In this document: positions 35,652 to 40,467 of the stretch, piece after piece
Position numbering within the stretch: the first letter of the stretch is position 1
Layout of the letters: each line of letters starts with the position of its first letter
Origin: Octopus sinensis
Lineage: Eukaryota
Length of the DNA: 64,000 nt
Direction: 5' to 3'
Assembly: GCF_006345805.1 (NCBI RefSeq)
Contig: NC_043014.1
Location: 17,856,001-17,920,000, forward strand
Notes under the pieces: generated by a model
Databases searched by the model: none
The model's input: the letters and a program-made list of their open reading frames with translations, nothing else
What the model was told of the DNA's origin: nothing
Position numbers and translations under genes: made by a program

Positions 35652-35797
<146 letters not shown>

Positions 35798-36057
35798 AAG
35801 TTTAACAATTAAGGATAATCTCTAATAAGGGATCTTAACAAGAAATTATCGGGTAGCTAGCGTGAAAACCTCATAAAAGAAAAGAATTCGAAAATAATTT
35901 TTTTCTTTTGAACAAATTAATTATATCTATATTGTATAGAGGGCATTATTACACATAAATGCCTCACACTAGGAGGGACAAAGTCATTACTACCAAAATT
36001 ATACTAATCATACCCAAATGCAGTTTTTCAAAGCAAGACATTTAAAAAAATGAATTT

Positions 36058-36115
36058 AGTTCTGTATCACCGTGATTTCACATTCAACTTACGTCTAATG
36101 ATCGTCAGCAGAACT
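36058..36115 (-). ncRNA. Type I hammerhead ribozyme, array copy L1
   Basis: Reverse complement of the plus-strand motif, identical over 58 nt. Confidence 0.85.
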
Positions 36116-36534
36116 GATTCTGAACACATCATAAATAAACAACCAACCTTACGTAGCGAAGACGAACAGACAACTGCTCACTCCGGCCAAGCACATGGAA
36201 TGTTTATAAATCATATATCCGGTAAATGGCGGGCTTTTTACGAACTGCATGTCGGATAATGAAAAGTATTTCGGAATAGTTTAACAATTAAGGATAATCT
36301 CTAATAAGGGATCTTAACAAGAATTATCGGGTAGCTAGCGTGAAAACCTCATAAAAGAAAAGAATTCGAAAATAATTTTTTTCTTTTGAACAAATAATTA
36401 TATCTATATTGTATAGAGGGCATTATTACACATAAATGCCTCACACTAGGAGGGACAAAGTCATTACTACCAAAATTATACTAATCATACCCAAATGCAG
36501 TTTTTCAAAGCAAGACATTTAAAAAAATGAATTT

Positions 36535-36592
36535 AGTTCTGTATCACCGTGATTTCACATTCAACTTACGTCTAATGATCGTCAGCAGAACT
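36535..36592 (-). ncRNA. Type I hammerhead ribozyme, array copy L2
   Basis: As L1. Confidence 0.85.
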
Positions 36593-36886
36593 AATTCTGA
36601 ACACATCATAATAAACTACCAACCTTACGTAGCGAAGACGAACAGACAACTGCTCACTCCGGCCAAGCACATGGAATGTTTATAAATCATATATCCGGTA
36701 AATGGCGGGCTTTTTACGAACTGCATGTCGGGTATGAAAAAGTATTTCGGAATGCAGTTCGTAAAAAGCCCGCCATTTACCGGACATATGATTTATAAAC
36801 ATTCCATGTGCTTGGCCGGAGTGAGCAGTTGTCTGTTCGTCTTCGCTACGTAAGGTTGGTAGTTTATTTATGATGTGTTCAGAATT

Positions 36887-36944
36887 AGTTCTGCTGACGA
36901 TCATTAGACGTAAGTTGAATGTGAAATCACGGTGATACAGAACT
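36887..36944 (+). ncRNA. Type I hammerhead ribozyme, array copy R1
   Basis: AGTTCTG-CTGACGA-T-CATTAGAC-GTAA-GTTGAATG-T-GAAA-TCAC-G-GTGA-TA-CAGAACT. Confidence 0.85.
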
Positions 36945-37367
36945 AAATTCATTTTTTTAAATGTCTTGCTTTGAAAAACTGCATTTGGGTATGATTAGTA
37001 TAATTTTGGTAGTAATGACTTTGTCCCTCCTAGTGTGAGGCATTTATGTGTAATAATGCCCTCTATACAATATAGATATAATTAATTTGTTCAAAAGAAA
37101 AAAATTATTTTCGAATTCTTTTCTTTTATGAGGTTTTCACGCTAGCTACCCGATAATTTCTTGTTAAGATCCCTTATTAAGAGATTATCCTTAATTGTTA
37201 AACTTATTCCGAAATACTTTTCATTACCCGACATGCAGTTCGTAAAAAGCCCGCCATTTACCGGATATATGATTTATAAACATTCCATGTGCTTGGCCGG
37301 AGTGAGCAGTTGTCTGTTCGTCTTCGCTACGTAAGGTTGGTAGTTTATTTATGATGTGTTCAGAATC

Positions 37368-37425
37368 AGTTCTGCTGACGATCATTAGACGTAAGTTGAA
37401 TGTGAAATCACGGTGATACAGAACT
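37368..37425 (+). ncRNA. Type I hammerhead ribozyme, array copy R2
   Basis: Stem I 37368-74/37419-25; core 37375-81; GAAA 37404-07; predicted cleavage after A37418. Confidence 0.85.
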
Positions 37426-37847
37426 AAATTCATTTTTTTAATGTCTTGCTTTGAAAAACTGCATTTGGGTATGATTAGTATAATTTTGGTAGTAATTACT
37501 TTGTCCCTCCTATTGTTAGGCATTTATGTGTAATAATGCCCTCTATACAATATAGATATAATTAATTTGTTCAAAACAAAAAAATTATTTTCGAATTCTT
37601 TTCTTTTATGAGGTTTTCACGCTAGCTACCCGATAATTTCTTGCTAAGATCCCTTATTAAGAGATTATCCTTAATTGTTAAACTTATTCCGAAATACTTT
37701 TCATTACCCGACATGCAGTTCGTAAAAAGCCCGCCATTTACCGGATATATGATTTATAAACATTCCATGTGCTTGGCCGGAGTGAGCAGTTGTCTGTTCG
37801 TCTTCGCTACGTAAGGTTGGTAGTTTATTTATGATGTGTTCAGAATC

Positions 37848-37905
37848 AGTTCTGCTGACGATCATTAGACGTAAGTTGAATGTGAAATCACGGTGATACA
37901 GAACT
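37848..37905 (+). ncRNA. Type I hammerhead ribozyme, array copy R3
   Basis: Identical motif. Confidence 0.85.
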
Positions 37906-38328
37906 AAATTCATTTTTTTAAATGTCTTGCTTTGAAAAACTGCATTTGGGTATGATTAGTATAATTTTGGTAGTAATTACTTTGTCCCTCCTATTGTGAG
38001 GCATTTATGTGTAATAATGCCCTCTATACAATATAGATATAATTAATTTGTTCAAAAGAAAAAAATTATTTTCGAATTCTTTTCTTTTATGAGGTTTTCA
38101 CGCTAGCTACCTGATAATTTCTTGTTAAGATCCCTTATTAAGAGATTATCCTTAATTGTTAAACTTATTCCGAAATACTTTTCATTACCCGACATGCAGT
38201 TCGTAAAAAGCCCGCCATTTACCGGATATATGATTTATAAACATTCCATGTGCTTGGCCGGAGTGAGCAGTTGTCTGTTCGTCTTCGCTACGTAAGGTTG
38301 GTAGTTTATTTATGATGTGTTCAGAATC

Positions 38329-38386
38329 AGTTCTGCTGACGATCATTAGACGTAAGTTGAATGTGAAATCACGGTGATACAGAACT
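38329..38386 (+). ncRNA. Type I hammerhead ribozyme, array copy R4
   Basis: Identical motif. Confidence 0.85.
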
Positions 38387-38809
38387 AAATTCATTTTTTT
38401 AAATGTCTTGCTTTGAAAAACTGCATTTGGGTATGATTAGTATAATTTTGGTAGTAATGACTTTGTCCCTCCTAGTGTGAGGCATTTATGTGTAATAATG
38501 CCCTCTATACAATATAGATATAATTAATTTGTTCAAAAGAAAAAAATTATTTTCGAATTCTTTTCTTTTATGAGGTTTTCACGCTAGCTACCCGATAATT
38601 TCTTGCTAAGATCCCTTATTAAGAGATTATCCTTAATTGTTAAACTTATTCCGAAATACTTTTAATTACCCGACATGCAGTTCGTAAAAAGCCCGCCATT
38701 TACCGGATATATGATTTATAAACATTCCATGTGCTTGGCCGGAGTGAGCAGTTGTCTGTTCGTCTTCGCTACGTAAGGTTGGTAGTTTATTTATGATGTG
38801 TTCAGAATC

Positions 38810-38867
38810 AGTTCTGCTGACGATCATTAGACGTAAGTTGAATGTGAAATCACGGTGATACAGAACT
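38810..38867 (+). ncRNA. Type I hammerhead ribozyme, array copy R5
   Basis: Identical motif. Confidence 0.85.
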
Positions 38868-39290
38868 AAATTCATTTTTTTAAATGTCTTGCTTTGAAAA
38901 ACTGCATTTGGGTATGATTAGTATAATTTTGGTAGTAATGACTTTGTCCCTCCTAGTGTGAGGCATTTATGTGTAATAATGCCCTCTATACAATATAGAT
39001 ATAATTAATTTGTTCAAAAGAAAAAAATTATTTTCGAATTCTTTTCTTTTATGAGGTTTTCACGCTAGCTACCTGATAATTTCTTGTTAAGATCCCTTAT
39101 TAAGAGATTATCCTTAATTGTTAAACTTATTCCGAAATACTTTTCATTACCCGACATGCAGTTCGTAAAAAGCCCGCCATTTACCGGATATATGATTTAT
39201 AAACATTCCATGTGCTTGGCCGGAGTGAGCAGTTGTCTGTTCGTCTTCGCTACGTAAGGTTGGTAGTTTATTTATGATGTGTTCAGAATC

Positions 39291-39348
39291 AGTTCTGCTG
39301 ACGATCATTAGACGTAAGTTGAATGTGAAATCACGGTGATACAGAACT
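39291..39348 (+). ncRNA. Type I hammerhead ribozyme, array copy R6
   Basis: Identical motif. Confidence 0.85.
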
Positions 39349-39771
39349 AAATTCATTTTTTTAAATGTCTTGCTTTGAAAAACTGCATTTGGGTATGATT
39401 AGTATAATTTTGGTAGTAATGACTTTGTCCCTCCTAGTGTGAGGCATTTATGTGTAATAATGCCCTCTATACAATATAGATATAATTAATTTGTTCAAAA
39501 GAAAAAAATTATTTTCGAATTCTTTTCTTTTATGAGGTTTTCACGCTAGCTACCTGATAATTTCTTGTTAAGATCCCTTATTAAGAGATTATCCTTAATT
39601 GTTAAACTTATTCCGAAATACTTTTCATTACCCGACATGCAGTTCGTAAAAAGCCCGCCATTTACCGGATATATGATTTATAAACATTCCATGTGCTTGG
39701 CCGGAGTGAGCAGTTGTCTGTTCGTCTTCGCTACGTAAGGTTGGTAGTTTATTTATGATGTGTTCAGAATC

Positions 39772-39829
39772 AGTTCTGCTGACGATCATTAGACGTAAGT
39801 TGAATGTGAAATCACGGTGATACAGAACT
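39772..39829 (+). ncRNA. Type I hammerhead ribozyme, array copy R7
   Basis: Identical motif. Confidence 0.85.
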
Positions 39830-40251
39830 AAATTCATTTTTTTAAATGTCTTGCTTTGAAAAACTGCATTTGGGTATGATTAGTATAATTTTGGTAGTAA
39901 TGACTTTGTCCCTCCTAGTGTGAGGCATTTATGTGTAATAATGCCCTCTATACAATATAGATATAATTAATTTGTTCAAAAGAAAAAAATTATTTTCGCA
40001 TTCTTTTCTTTTATGAGGTTTTCACGCTAGCTACCCGATAATTTCTTGTTAAGATCCTTATTAAGAGATTATCCTTAATTGTTAAACTTATTCCGAAATA
40101 CTTTTCATTACCCGACATGCAGTTCGTAAAAAGCCCGCCATTTACCGGATATATGATTTATAAACATTCCATGTGCTTGGCCGGAGTGAGCAGTTGTCTG
40201 TTCGTCTTCGCTACGTAAGGTTGGTAGTTTATTTATGATGTGTTCAGAATC

Positions 40252-40309
40252 AGTTCTGCTGACGATCATTAGACGTAAGTTGAATGTGAAATCACGGTGA
40301 TACAGAACT
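40252..40309 (+). ncRNA. Type I hammerhead ribozyme, array copy R8
   Basis: Identical motif. Confidence 0.85.
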
Positions 40310-40432
40310 AAATTCATTTTTTTTAAATGTCTTGCTTTGAAAAACTGCATTTGGGTATGATTAGTATAATTTTGGTAGTAATGACTTTGTCCCTCCTAGT
40401 GTGAGGCATTTATGTGTAATAATGCCCTCTAT

Positions 40433-40467
<35 letters not shown>

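What the first reader, a model, noticed from the sequence alone, without database searches (positions are those of the whole stretch)
35796..40438. Ten-copy hammerhead ribozyme array: a protein-free, retrozyme-like element in a (TA)n tract
Seen: ~481-bp units, each with AGTTCTG-CTGACGA-(stem II)-GAAA-(stem III)-TA-CAGAACT, a complete type I hammerhead fold with a perfect 7-bp stem I. No RT-like ORF occurs in the unit. Established: type I hammerheads occur in PLE pseudo-LTRs and in tandem non-LTR retrozymes (newt satellite 2, schistosome Sm-alpha, cricket satellites), whose multimeric transcripts self-cleave into monomers that can circularise. Inference: transcription of the right arm would release 481-nt monomers, potentially circRNAs, copied back into DNA by a PLE RT in trans. 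PLE remnants at 11197, 8840 and 41428 show such enzymes have existed in this genome. High unit identity implies recent origin. Whether this family is already catalogued cannot be judged here.
Basis: partly seen in the sequence, partly recalled or inferred. Interest (0 to 1): 0.92.

Follow-up and report, generated by a model that had tools for sequence, protein, structure and literature searches.

The report
Hammerhead-ribozyme tandem repeat of Penelope type
A protein-free 481-bp repeat, present ten times and each copy carrying an intact self-cleaving "hammerhead" RNA motif of the kind found at the ends of Penelope-like retrotransposons, sits in a (TA)n microsatellite; it is a good new example of a known class of animal mobile elements (retrozymes), not a new class.

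Summary
There are 7.7 direct units of 481 bp (36754-40446) and exactly 2.0 inverted units (35796-36753). They are 97-99% alike and abut (TA)n on both sides. All ten units carry an identical 58-nt type I hammerhead motif. Rfam does not call it: no hit at gathering, and only 14.5 bits against a cut-off of 34.

I built a covariance model from seven hammerheads that lie downstream of Hydra-clade Penelope-like element (PLE) ORFs in other animals, using no window sequence. It scores the array motifs at 21.4 bits (E about 0.001), with every modelled pair standard. It also finds an unreported PLE hammerhead at 14057-14096 (35.5 bits), 1.1 kb downstream of a degenerate Hydra-type PLE ORF (11219-12955).

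The array motif shares three quirks of that lineage:
- a U·U at the base of helix II;
- a helix III built of palindromic arms round one central base, so probably active only as a dimer;
- (TA)n as the insertion target.

The tandem-plus-inverted layout is also typical of PLEs. The monomer RNA is unusually structured (z = -4.8).

Best reading: a non-LTR retrozyme mobilised in trans by a (TA)n-targeting PLE. Cleavage, circles and mobility are inferred, not shown. It is a new member of a known kind.

The parts
35646..35798 (.). Left (AT)n microsatellite flank. It abuts the 3' end of the inverted arm.
   Evidence: TRF; sequence.
35796..36753 (-). Inverted (left) arm of 958 bp. It runs from unit position 269 to unit position 268, which is exactly 2.0 unit laps. 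It holds two hammerhead motifs.
   Evidence: blastn; unit phase; variants.
36725..36753 (-). A 29-nt stretch of unit sequence present only on the left-arm side of the head-to-head junction. The arms are therefore offset rather than a perfect palindrome. There is a 2-nt AT microhomology at the joint.
   Evidence: Sequence.
36754..40446 (+). Direct (right) arm of 7.68 units of 480-481 bp, from unit position 298 to 137. It holds eight hammerhead motifs. Its 3' end abuts (TA)n.
   Evidence: TRF.
36058..36115 (-). Hammerhead motif, left arm, distal copy. The predicted cut is between 36065 and 36064 on the minus strand.
36535..36592 (-). Hammerhead motif, left arm, copy next to the junction. The predicted cut is between 36542 and 36541. 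A C-to-U variant just 5' of helix I lengthens the helix to 9 bp.
36887..36944 (+). Hammerhead motif 1 of the right arm, cut after 36937. It carries the same C-to-U variant as the junction-proximal left copy.
37368..37425 (+). Hammerhead motif 2, cut after A37418. Helix I can extend by GAAU/AUUC across a 1x2 internal loop (37363-37431).
37848..37905 (+). Hammerhead motif 3, cut after 37898.
38329..38386 (+). Hammerhead motif 4, cut after 38379.
38810..38867 (+). Hammerhead motif 5, cut after 38860.
39291..39348 (+). Hammerhead motif 6, cut after 39341.
39772..39829 (+). Hammerhead motif 7, cut after 39822.
40252..40309 (+). Hammerhead motif 8, cut after 40302.
40436..40502 (.). Right (TA)n microsatellite flank.
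   Evidence: TRF; sequence.
11219..12955 (+). Degenerate ORF of a Hydra-clade Penelope-like element (RT plus C-terminal GIY-YIG), with frameshifts and stops. It is context for the array: a candidate relative of the enzyme that mobilised it.
   Evidence: tblastn with 120 homologues; translation; motifs of the homologues, compared with PMC8557442.
14057..14096 (+). PLE-type hammerhead with an intact core, 1.1 kb downstream of that ORF on the same strand and about 25-40 nt before a (TA)n tract.
   Evidence: Own model R2: 35.5 bits, E = 9e-8; sequence.
41848..41888 (+). Decayed PLE-type hammerhead relic with mutated core positions, about 30 nt before (TA)n.
   Evidence: R2: 14.3 bits.
395..434 (-). 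Decayed PLE-type hammerhead relic.
   Evidence: R2: 12.8 bits.

Best explanation
The array is a non-autonomous retroelement of the animal non-LTR retrozyme kind. Each 481-bp non-coding unit carries one type I hammerhead ribozyme, and that ribozyme belongs to the lineage found at the 3' ends of Hydra-clade Penelope-like elements.

Proposed working (inferred):
- A multimeric + strand transcript folds so that neighbouring hammerheads pair through their quasi-palindromic helix III, forming a double hammerhead.
- It cuts after the A of ...GGUGAUA|CAGAACU..., which releases 481-nt monomers with 5'-OH and 2',3'-cyclic phosphate ends.
- A host RtcB-type tRNA ligase circularises these monomers.
- A PLE reverse transcriptase/GIY-YIG endonuclease supplied in trans nicks (TA)n. 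It primes on short UA/AU matches in the RNA and copies the circular or multimeric template over several laps, which gives tandem units.
- Priming from the second nick gives the inverted arm, and the two cDNAs are joined head to head.

Shown by sequence: the motif, its membership of the PLE hammerhead lineage, the tandem-plus-inverted layout in (TA)n, the lack of coding capacity and the structured RNA.

Inferred: transcription, cleavage, circularisation and trans-mobilisation.
For: The array has ten identical motifs with every invariant core base, an A15.1-U16.1 pair and an AUA cleavage triplet.

Model R2 was built only from hammerheads beside Hydra-clade PLE ORFs in other animals. It scores the array motifs at 21.4 bits, E = 0.0014, over the full model with no non-standard pair. 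The next non-PLE hit in the window scores about 9 bits.

The structure of that family is supported by covariation: 95.9% of cells are paired against 66% in shuffles, and 11 of 12 pairs show double changes. The array motif keeps the pairs with different bases in all three helices.

The array motif shares lineage-specific quirks with the family. These are the U·U at 10.1/11.1 and a helix III made of palindromic arms round one base. The helix III duplex folds at -11.9 kcal/mol against about 0 for the hairpin.

Both ends of the array abut (TA)n, the stated target of the Hydra, Naiad and Neptune PLE clades. Tandem copies plus an inverted, 5'-truncated copy are the stated hallmark of PLE insertions (PMC8557442).

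A degenerate Hydra-type PLE ORF with its own hammerhead lies in the same window.

The circular monomer folds at -116.9 kcal/mol against -88.9 +/- 5.9 for shuffles (z = -4.8). The opposite strand gives z = -3.0.

The hammerhead fold lies within 1.2 kcal/mol of the MFE.

There are precedents in the literature. The axolotl HHR_Amex2 has the same U·U and self-cleaves, better as a dimer (PMC7229834). PLE hammerheads have a long helix II with an unpaired base at its 5' end (PMC4209133). Retrozyme units range from 51 to 972 bp (bioRxiv 10.64898/2026.07.22.740005).

The left arm is exactly 2.0 laps of the unit, and neither arm ends at the cut site, as expected for a circular or multimeric template.
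Against: There are no expression or cleavage data.

Rfam's curated models do not reach threshold. A model built from four published canonical retrozyme hammerheads gives only 9.3 bits, E = 2.7.

The E-value from R2 is rough, good to about a factor of five.

No related copy of the unit was found outside this array, so there is no covariation within the family of the unit itself.

Some variants are shared by non-adjacent units. This is not what a single clean rolling-circle copy predicts, and it points to some DNA-level turnover or a heterogeneous template.

All PLE copies seen in the window are degenerate, so an active partner enzyme is not shown.

PLE-type minimal hammerheads cleave poorly in vitro (PMC4209133).
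Confidence: 0.7

Rival explanations
1. The array is ordinary satellite DNA. A fragment derived from a PLE 3' end, with its hammerhead, was amplified in place by unequal crossing-over or replication slippage. The hammerhead is a passenger with no present RNA-level role.
For: Variants are shared by subsets of units, including non-adjacent ones (columns 81/97, 215 and 228), which fits array turnover at the DNA level. No copy was found outside this locus in anything searchable. Helix III is unstable as a monomer.
Against: All ten hammerheads are identical with an intact core, whereas two of the three PLE hammerhead relics elsewhere in the window have lost core positions. About 20 variable columns lie elsewhere in the unit. 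Folding is strongly strand-asymmetric and non-random. Both array ends lie in (TA)n and there is an inverted arm of exactly two laps, which in-place amplification does not predict.
Confidence: 0.2
2. The hammerhead-like motif is a chance combination of CUGANGA, GAAA and short inverted repeats in an AT-rich repeat.
For: Rfam finds nothing at threshold. A degenerate pattern search of metagenomes returned a motif inside a bacterial ORF that even had a 7-bp helix I, which shows that look-alikes exist in very large search spaces.
Against: The descriptor gave 0 hits in 3000 shuffles. Independent model R2 gives E about 0.001 with all 12 pairs standard. The motif shares non-core quirks with PLE hammerheads. 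The context is the one in which such ribozymes are known to occur: a tandem repeat, (TA)n, and a PLE nearby.
Confidence: 0.03
3. The inverted left arm is an assembly artefact, for example a fold-back chimeric long read, and the real locus is a simple direct array.
For: Most differences specific to the left arm are 1-nt deletions in short homopolymers (columns 148, 221, 243, 268 and 412), a typical long-read error pattern. Palindromic junctions are a known assembly artefact (own knowledge).
Against: The arms are not mirror images. There is a 29-nt offset at the joint. One deletion is shared by both left units and absent from the right arm, and right-arm variants are absent from the left arm. 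The left arm ends in its own 150-bp (AT)n tract. Inverted 5'-truncated copies are the norm for PLE insertions (PMC8557442).
Confidence: 0.1

Closest known systems
Metazoan non-LTR retrozymes (Cervera and de la Pena 2020, PMC7229834; Li et al. 2026 preprint)
   Same: Tandem units of a few hundred bp, one type I hammerhead per unit, no ORF, no LTR/PBS/PPT, GC below 50%, a highly self-paired predicted circular monomer, and co-occurrence with PLEs.
   Different: The unit (481 bp) is longer than the 170-400 nt first described, although it lies within the 51-972 bp range of the 2026 survey. The hammerhead is not the canonical invertebrate form (6-bp helix I, 4-bp helix II, loop-loop contacts) but the PLE type: a U·U at the base of a long helix II and a helix III that is stable only as a dimer. 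An inverted arm and (TA)n flanks are not features reported for retrozymes in the papers I read. Expression was not tested.
Hammerheads in the 3' regions or pseudo-LTRs of Penelope-like elements, especially the Hydra clade (Cervera and de la Pena 2014, PMC4209133; Craig et al. 2021, PMC8557442)
   Same: The core, the unpaired U at the 5' end of helix II, the quasi-palindromic helix III, (TA)n a short distance away, and tandem plus inverted copies. The array motif scores 21.4 bits with a model built from such hammerheads.
   Different: There is no RT/EN ORF between copies. Spacing is 481 bp rather than about 2-3 kb. Helix I (7 bp plus extension) and helix II (9 positions with a GUAA loop) are longer. 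The unit has no detectable similarity to the PLE relics in the window or to the PLE loci fetched.
Newt satellite 2 and axolotl retrozymes (HHR_Amex2)
   Same: Tandem satellite with a type I hammerhead. Amex2 has the same U·U at the base of helix II and an A at position 17, and works better as a dimer (construct sequence).
   Different: These are vertebrate elements with 330-350 bp units and tens of thousands of copies, and their RNA and circles have been shown experimentally. Here there is one array and no RNA data.
Schistosome Sm-alpha and cricket pDo500 hammerhead satellites
   Same: Repeats encoding type I hammerheads that process multimeric transcripts (own knowledge).
   Different: Their hammerheads are canonical, with a G-C pair at 10.1/11.1 and loop-loop contacts, and they are matched by Rfam Hammerhead_1. 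This motif is not.
Plant LTR retrozymes
   Same: Non-autonomous, hammerhead-processed circular RNA intermediates mobilised by an autonomous retroelement.
   Different: They have type III hammerheads inside LTRs, PBS and PPT motifs, 4-bp target-site duplications and Ty3/Gypsy partners. None of these is present here.

Membership tests
Hammerhead ribozyme, type I | Conserved core: C3 U4 G5 A6 N7 G8 A9, G12 A13 A14, an A15.1-U16.1 pair, and H17 not G (CUGANGA / GAAAY / RUH) | tested here: met
   The motif reads CUGACGA ... GAAA-U ... A-U-A| in all ten copies.
Hammerhead ribozyme, type I | Three helices round the core, with helix I open (5' and 3' ends in helix I) | tested here: met
   Helix I is 7 bp and perfect, with a further 4 bp beyond an internal loop. 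Helix II has 7 standard pairs plus an A·G mismatch and a GUAA loop. Helix III has 4-5 pairs. The fold energy is -9.1 kcal/mol against an MFE of -10.3. Exception: 10.1/11.1 is U·U, as in the axolotl Amex2 and the PLE hammerheads.
Hammerhead ribozyme, type I | Match to the curated Rfam model at gathering score | tested here: not met
   No hit at gathering. The best match is RF00163 at 14.5 bits against 34, and it aligns only helix I plus CUGACGA.
Hammerhead ribozyme, type I | Significant match to an independent structure-plus-sequence model of related natural hammerheads | tested here: met
   Model R2 (7 PLE-associated hammerheads from other animals): 21.4 bits, E = 0.0014, all pairs standard. 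Model R1 (4 canonical retrozyme hammerheads) ranks the motif top in the window but at only 9.3 bits, E = 2.7.
Hammerhead ribozyme, type I | Loop 1 / loop 2 tertiary contacts of canonical type I motifs | tested here: inconclusive
   There is an internal loop (C / AA) 7 bp up helix I and a GNRA loop on a long helix II. The geometry cannot be judged from sequence. Such contacts are also missing from mussel and PLE hammerheads.
Hammerhead ribozyme, type I | Site-specific self-cleavage | not testable with these tools
   This needs in vitro transcription or RNA end mapping.
Metazoan non-LTR retrozyme | Tandem repeat with a complete HHR in at least two consecutive units, and motif MFE below -5 kcal/mol (operational criteria of Li et al. 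2026) | tested here: met
   Eight consecutive + units. The motif MFE is -10.3 kcal/mol.
Metazoan non-LTR retrozyme | No coding capacity, no LTR/PBS/PPT, and GC below 50% | tested here: met
   The longest ORF is 99 aa with no homologue. The unit GC is 32.8%. No tRNA-like or PBS feature was found.
Metazoan non-LTR retrozyme | A monomer predicted to form a stable, highly self-paired circular RNA | tested here: met
   The circular MFE is -116.9 kcal/mol, z = -4.8, with 64% of bases paired.
Metazoan non-LTR retrozyme | Abundant unit-length linear and circular RNA in tissues | not testable with these tools
   No transcriptome of the source organism is available here.
Metazoan non-LTR retrozyme | Multiple dispersed arrays or monomers in the genome (evidence of mobility) | not testable with these tools
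   Only one 64-kb window is held, and it has no other copy. Public collections searched hold no copy.
PLE-mediated insertion | Insertion into a microsatellite, with (TA)n the target for the Hydra, Naiad and Neptune clades | tested here: met
   Both ends abut (TA)n. (TA)n covers only 4.1% of the window.
PLE-mediated insertion | Partial tandem copies plus an adjacent inverted 5'-truncated copy | tested here: met
   Head-to-head arms of 2.0 and 7.7 units; description of the hallmark in PMC8557442.
Hydra-clade PLE (the relic at 11219-12955, not the array) | RT plus C-terminal GIY-YIG, a CxCX5C linker, CxxC and CxH round the conserved E and N, no CCHH, (TA)n target, and an HHR present | tested here: met
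   The homologues P0004, P0007 and P0034 show these motifs (compared). The window copy itself is frameshifted, and its CxC linker is mutated. Its HHR is at 14057-14096 and (TA)n starts near 14120. No phylogeny was made.

The most novel reading that the evidence does not exclude
This single locus may preserve the footprint of how animal retrozymes integrate. A (TA)n-targeting Hydra-clade PLE enzyme would have copied a circular 481-nt ribozyme RNA by rolling-circle, target-primed reverse transcription from both nicks of one (TA)n site. Three observations fit this: both 3' ends lie in (TA)n at UA/AU microhomologies; neither end lies at the ribozyme cut site; and one arm is exactly 2.00 laps, as if synthesis stopped on meeting its own start. 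If so, it would be the first retrozyme family tied to the Hydra clade, and it would be structural evidence for a circular template, which the papers I read still only propose.
Probability: 0.3. Interest if true: 0.6.

Novelty: new member of a known kind. Interest (0 to 1): 0.42.

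Why it matters
Retrozymes are a recently recognised and abundant source of circular RNAs in animals. How they are copied back into DNA is still inferred mainly from co-occurrence with PLEs and, in Xenopus, from sequence similarity to pseudo-LTRs.

This array adds three things:
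- A retrozyme-like element whose ribozyme is of the PLE (Hydra-type) design rather than the canonical retrozyme design.
- An insertion architecture that matches PLE integration point by point: the (TA)n target, tandem copies plus an inverted arm, and an arm of a whole number of laps.
- A contrast within one window between decayed PLE hammerheads and ten intact, identical array hammerheads, which suggests recent activity or selection.

It also shows that Rfam's hammerhead models miss this lineage completely, including a clear PLE hammerhead at 14057-14096.

Tried and rejected
- Rfam was run at gathering on the whole window and at E<=10 on the array. It gave no ribozyme family; the only hits were (TA)n-driven miRNA look-alikes and snoRNA noise.
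- The 99-aa minus-strand ORF of the unit was used as a handle to find copies in public assemblies. No homologue was found.
- Exact and degenerate DNA pattern scans were run on metagenome, prokaryote-genome and viral collections. There were no true copies. The single metagenome hit, L001, lies inside a bacterial ORF, is not a repeat and is not called by Rfam, so I treat it as chance.
- A model from four published canonical retrozyme hammerheads ranked the array top in the window, but at E = 2.7, which is inconclusive.
- I tried to identify the organism through the RT-like ORF (best hit 48% identity, no informative names) and the mariner relic (horizontally spread, uninformative). The organism stays unidentified. 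My impression that SINE-like repeats near 41930-42330 look like those of an octopus rests on memory only and was not tested.
- Blastn of the unit against the PLE relics in the window and against 11 PLE loci from other animals found no similarity outside the hammerhead.
- An alternative type III reading, with helix I closed by the CAGAA-UCAG-UUCUG hairpin, was rejected because helix III would not pair (read from the sequence).
- The claimed PLE remnant at 8840 gave only a non-significant tblastn match.

Full report
**What is there.** Tandem Repeats Finder reports a 481-bp period over 36752-40446, with 7.7 copies and 99% matches. It also reports (AT)n tracts at 35646-35798 and 40436-40502. Blastn of the unit against the window adds an inverted arm at 35796-36753 and finds no other copy in the 64 kb.

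The string AGTTCTGCTGANGA occurs eight times on the + strand and twice on the - strand. The 95 nt around it are identical in all ten copies, apart from one C/T just 5' of helix I in the two copies that face each other across the inversion junction.

The unit is 32.8% GC. Its longest ORF is 99 aa, on the minus strand, and no protein in the 5.8-billion-sequence collection shares even a few words with it. No tRNA is present in the window.

**The motif.** On the + strand it reads 5'-AGUUCUG CUGACGA U-CAUU-A-GAC-GUAA-GUU-G-AAUG-U GAA A-UCAC-G-GUGA-U A|CAGAACU-3'. All invariant hammerhead positions are present: C3-A9, G12-A14, the A15.1-U16.1 pair, and H17 = A. The cut would fall after 36937, 37418, 37898, 38379, 38860, 39341, 39822 and 40302 on the + strand. 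On the - strand it would fall between 36542/36541 and between 36065/36064.

- Helix I is a perfect 7 bp and can continue as GAAU/AUUC beyond a C/AA internal loop.
- The hammerhead fold costs -9.1 kcal/mol, against an MFE of -10.3 for the 58-mer.

Three features are not canonical:
- Positions 10.1/11.1 are U·U.
- Helix II is long: nine positions, one of them an A·G mismatch, closed by a GUAA loop.
- Helix III consists of arms UCAC/GUGA round a single G. As a hairpin it has about 0 kcal/mol, but as an intermolecular duplex between two copies it has -11.9 kcal/mol.

**Is it more than chance?** Rfam does not help. There is no hit at gathering on the window and none at E<=10 on the 5.2-kb array. 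On a 121-nt slice the only hit is Hammerhead_1 at 14.5 bits against a cut-off of 34, and that alignment skips helices II and III.

A descriptor written to be no stricter than the motif gave no hit in 3000 dinucleotide-preserving shuffles of the window (182 Mb). It required helix I of at least 6 bp, CUGANGA, helix II of at least 4 bp with a tolerated mismatch at its base, GAAA, helix III of at least 4 bp, and UH. A looser version (5, 3, 3) gave 13 hits in 3000. The descriptor was fitted after the fact, so I looked for an independent test.

**Independent test through Penelope-like elements.** The ORF at 11761-12543 has hundreds of homologues of about 400-450 aa. Tblastn with 120 of them maps a frameshifted copy to 11219-12955 (+) and a second scrap to 19780-20163 (-).

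The homologues carry YRDDG, a CxCX5C linker and a VVY...Y-G GIY-YIG. [quoted passage not shown] That is the description of the Hydra clade of PLEs. The same paper says this clade is short, inserts into (TA)n and always carries hammerheads (PMC8557442).

I fetched 11 loci that encode such homologues in other animals and ran the descriptor on them. Hammerheads appeared downstream of the ORFs, usually 25-105 nt before a (TA)n tract. Most had the layout CUGANGA-U-[short helix II]-U-GAA-A-NNN-N-NNN-U-H. This is the same U·U, and the same helix III with one central base, as in the array.

Seven of these hammerheads, with no window sequence among them, were aligned and made into covariance model R2. 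Searched over the whole window with filters off, R2 gave:
- 35.5 bits, E = 9e-8, at 14057-14096 (+). This site is 1.1 kb downstream of the PLE ORF relic and about 25-40 nt before (TA)n.
- 21.4 bits, E = 0.0014, for each of the ten array motifs. The alignment covers the full model with no non-standard pair, despite a 10-nt insertion in loop 2.
- 14.3 and 12.8 bits for two decayed relics at 41848-41888 (+) and 395-434 (-).
- Noise at about 9 bits.

E-values from this short calibration are good only to about a factor of five.

On the 23 distinct sequences that R2 collects from all sources, 95.9% of cells are paired. That compares with 66% in shuffles and 24-47% when partners are slid. Eleven of 12 pairs show compensatory double changes. 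The alignment is fitted to the model, so the slid controls are the fairer comparison.

A model from four published canonical retrozyme hammerheads (supplement of PMC7229834) ranked the array first in the window, but at only 9.3 bits, E = 2.7. The motif is therefore a hammerhead of the PLE design, not of the canonical retrozyme design.

**Literature precedents for the oddities.**
- The axolotl HHR_Amex2 has a U·U at the base of helix II. It cleaves 22% in one hour as a monomer and much better as a dimer (PMC7229834).
- PLE hammerheads have a helix II of 6-8 bp with an unpaired base at its 5' end, and are thought to work as dimers. They cleave poorly in vitro (PMC4209133).

**Architecture.** The two arms meet head to head at 36753/36754, with a 29-nt offset and an AT microhomology. 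Both 3' ends run into (TA)n at short UA/AU matches in the unit, at unit positions 137 and 268. (TA)n covers 4.1% of the window, so two exact abutments are not trivial.

Neither arm ends at the ribozyme cut site. The left arm starts at unit position 269 and ends at 268, which is exactly two laps. The right arm is 7.68 laps.

Craig et al. describe partial tandems plus an adjacent inverted, 5'-truncated copy, and insertion into (TA)n, as hallmarks of PLE integration.

The arms are not mirror images. Both left units share a deletion that is absent from the right arm, and right-arm variants are absent from the left. Many left-arm differences are 1-nt homopolymer deletions, so an assembly artefact for the inverted arm cannot be fully excluded.

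**RNA level.** Folded as a circle, the + strand monomer reaches -116.9 kcal/mol, against -88.9 +/- 5.9 for shuffles (z = -4.8, 64% of bases paired). The - strand gives z = -3.0. Helix I closes the rest of the molecule, as in published retrozyme circles. No other ribozyme family is detected on either strand.

**Conservation.** About 20 columns of the unit vary among copies, but none lies in the 58-nt motif. About 2.6 would be expected there, so this is suggestive only. By contrast, two of the three PLE hammerhead relics elsewhere in the window have lost core positions.

Some variants are shared by non-adjacent units. That does not fit one clean rolling-circle copy. It implies later gene conversion or unequal exchange, or a heterogeneous multimeric template.

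**Conclusion.** The most likely reading (about 0.7) is a non-LTR retrozyme-type element with a PLE/Hydra-type hammerhead, integrated into (TA)n by PLE machinery acting in trans. By analogy with published systems, it would be processed into unit-length RNAs that can be circularised by a tRNA ligase.

- Shown here: the motif, its lineage, the architecture, the lack of coding capacity and the RNA structure.
- Inferred: transcription, cleavage, circles and mobilisation.
- Main rival (about 0.2): the array is now just satellite DNA seeded by a PLE fragment.

The class is well described in cnidarians, molluscs, arthropods, amphibians and other groups. It is therefore a new member of a known kind and of moderate interest. 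The most novel possibility is that the whole-lap inverted arm and the (TA)n ends record rolling-circle reverse transcription of a circular template by a Hydra-clade enzyme.

No copy of the unit was found in any collection I could search, and the organism was not identified. Whether the family is already catalogued in a repeat library therefore remains open. The open-access literature search for hammerheads in octopus, my untested guess at the host, found nothing relevant.

Noticed in passing
It scores 35.5 bits, E = 9e-8, with my model and is missed by Rfam. It lies 1.1 kb downstream of the PLE ORF relic and about 25-40 nt before (TA)n. Its helix III is identical to that of a hammerhead in locus L008.
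   Followed up: yes
window 11219-12955 (+) and 19780-20163 (-): Degenerate copies of a Hydra-clade Penelope-like element (RT plus C-terminal GIY-YIG, with frameshifts and stops). The best public homologues are only about 48% identical.
   Followed up: partly
window 41848-41888 (+) and 395-434 (-): Decayed relics of the same hammerhead family (14.3 and 12.8 bits), with core positions mutated (for example CCGACGA in place of CUGANGA).
   Followed up: partly
window 35796-36753: The inverted arm is exactly 2.00 unit laps (unit position 269 to 268). The chance of the same phase within 2 nt is about 1%. This might mark termination of reverse transcription on returning to its own priming site on a circular template.
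   Followed up: partly
window 36887-36944 and 36535-36592: The only variant near the motif (C to U, one base 5' of helix I) is shared by the two copies that face each other across the inversion junction. It lengthens helix I from 7 to 9 bp.
   Followed up: no
window 37426-37445 and equivalents: A run of seven T follows 12 nt after the predicted cut site, and the other strand also has a T7 run. Multimeric transcripts are therefore unlikely to be made by RNA polymerase III.
   Followed up: no
L001 838-924 (-), contig Ga0194047_10073663: A bacterial-looking ORF contains, by apparent chance, CUGAGGA-U...U-GAAA-UCAC... with a perfect 7-bp helix I and a UA before it. It is not a repeat, Rfam does not call it, and its helix III is poor. 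It is a reminder that descriptor hits occur in very large databases.
   Followed up: partly
L010 6031-6078 and 6561-6608; L006 1297-1342: Beside Hydra-clade PLE ORFs in other animals lie canonical hammerheads with G-C at 10.1/11.1. L010 has two of them 530 nt apart. One in the sea anemone Actinostola (L006) is nearly identical to the published Acropora retrozyme hammerhead.
   Followed up: no
window 10502-11190 (+): A mariner/Mos1-type transposase relic with a frameshift. It is up to 74% identical to transposases from insects and other animals, which fits the known horizontal spread of this family and says nothing about the host.
   Followed up: partly
window 33000-35100: A block of extremely skewed low-complexity repeats (GC skew -0.5 then +0.34; CAC/CCG/AGA trinucleotide arrays) just upstream of the array.
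   Followed up: no
window 41930-42070 and 42250-42330; 57664-58101: SINE-like sequences that I recall, from memory only, as typical of octopus genomes, and an ORF resembling the C-terminus of a LINE reverse transcriptase. (TA)n and other microsatellites are very dense throughout (62 TA tracts in 64 kb).
   Followed up: no
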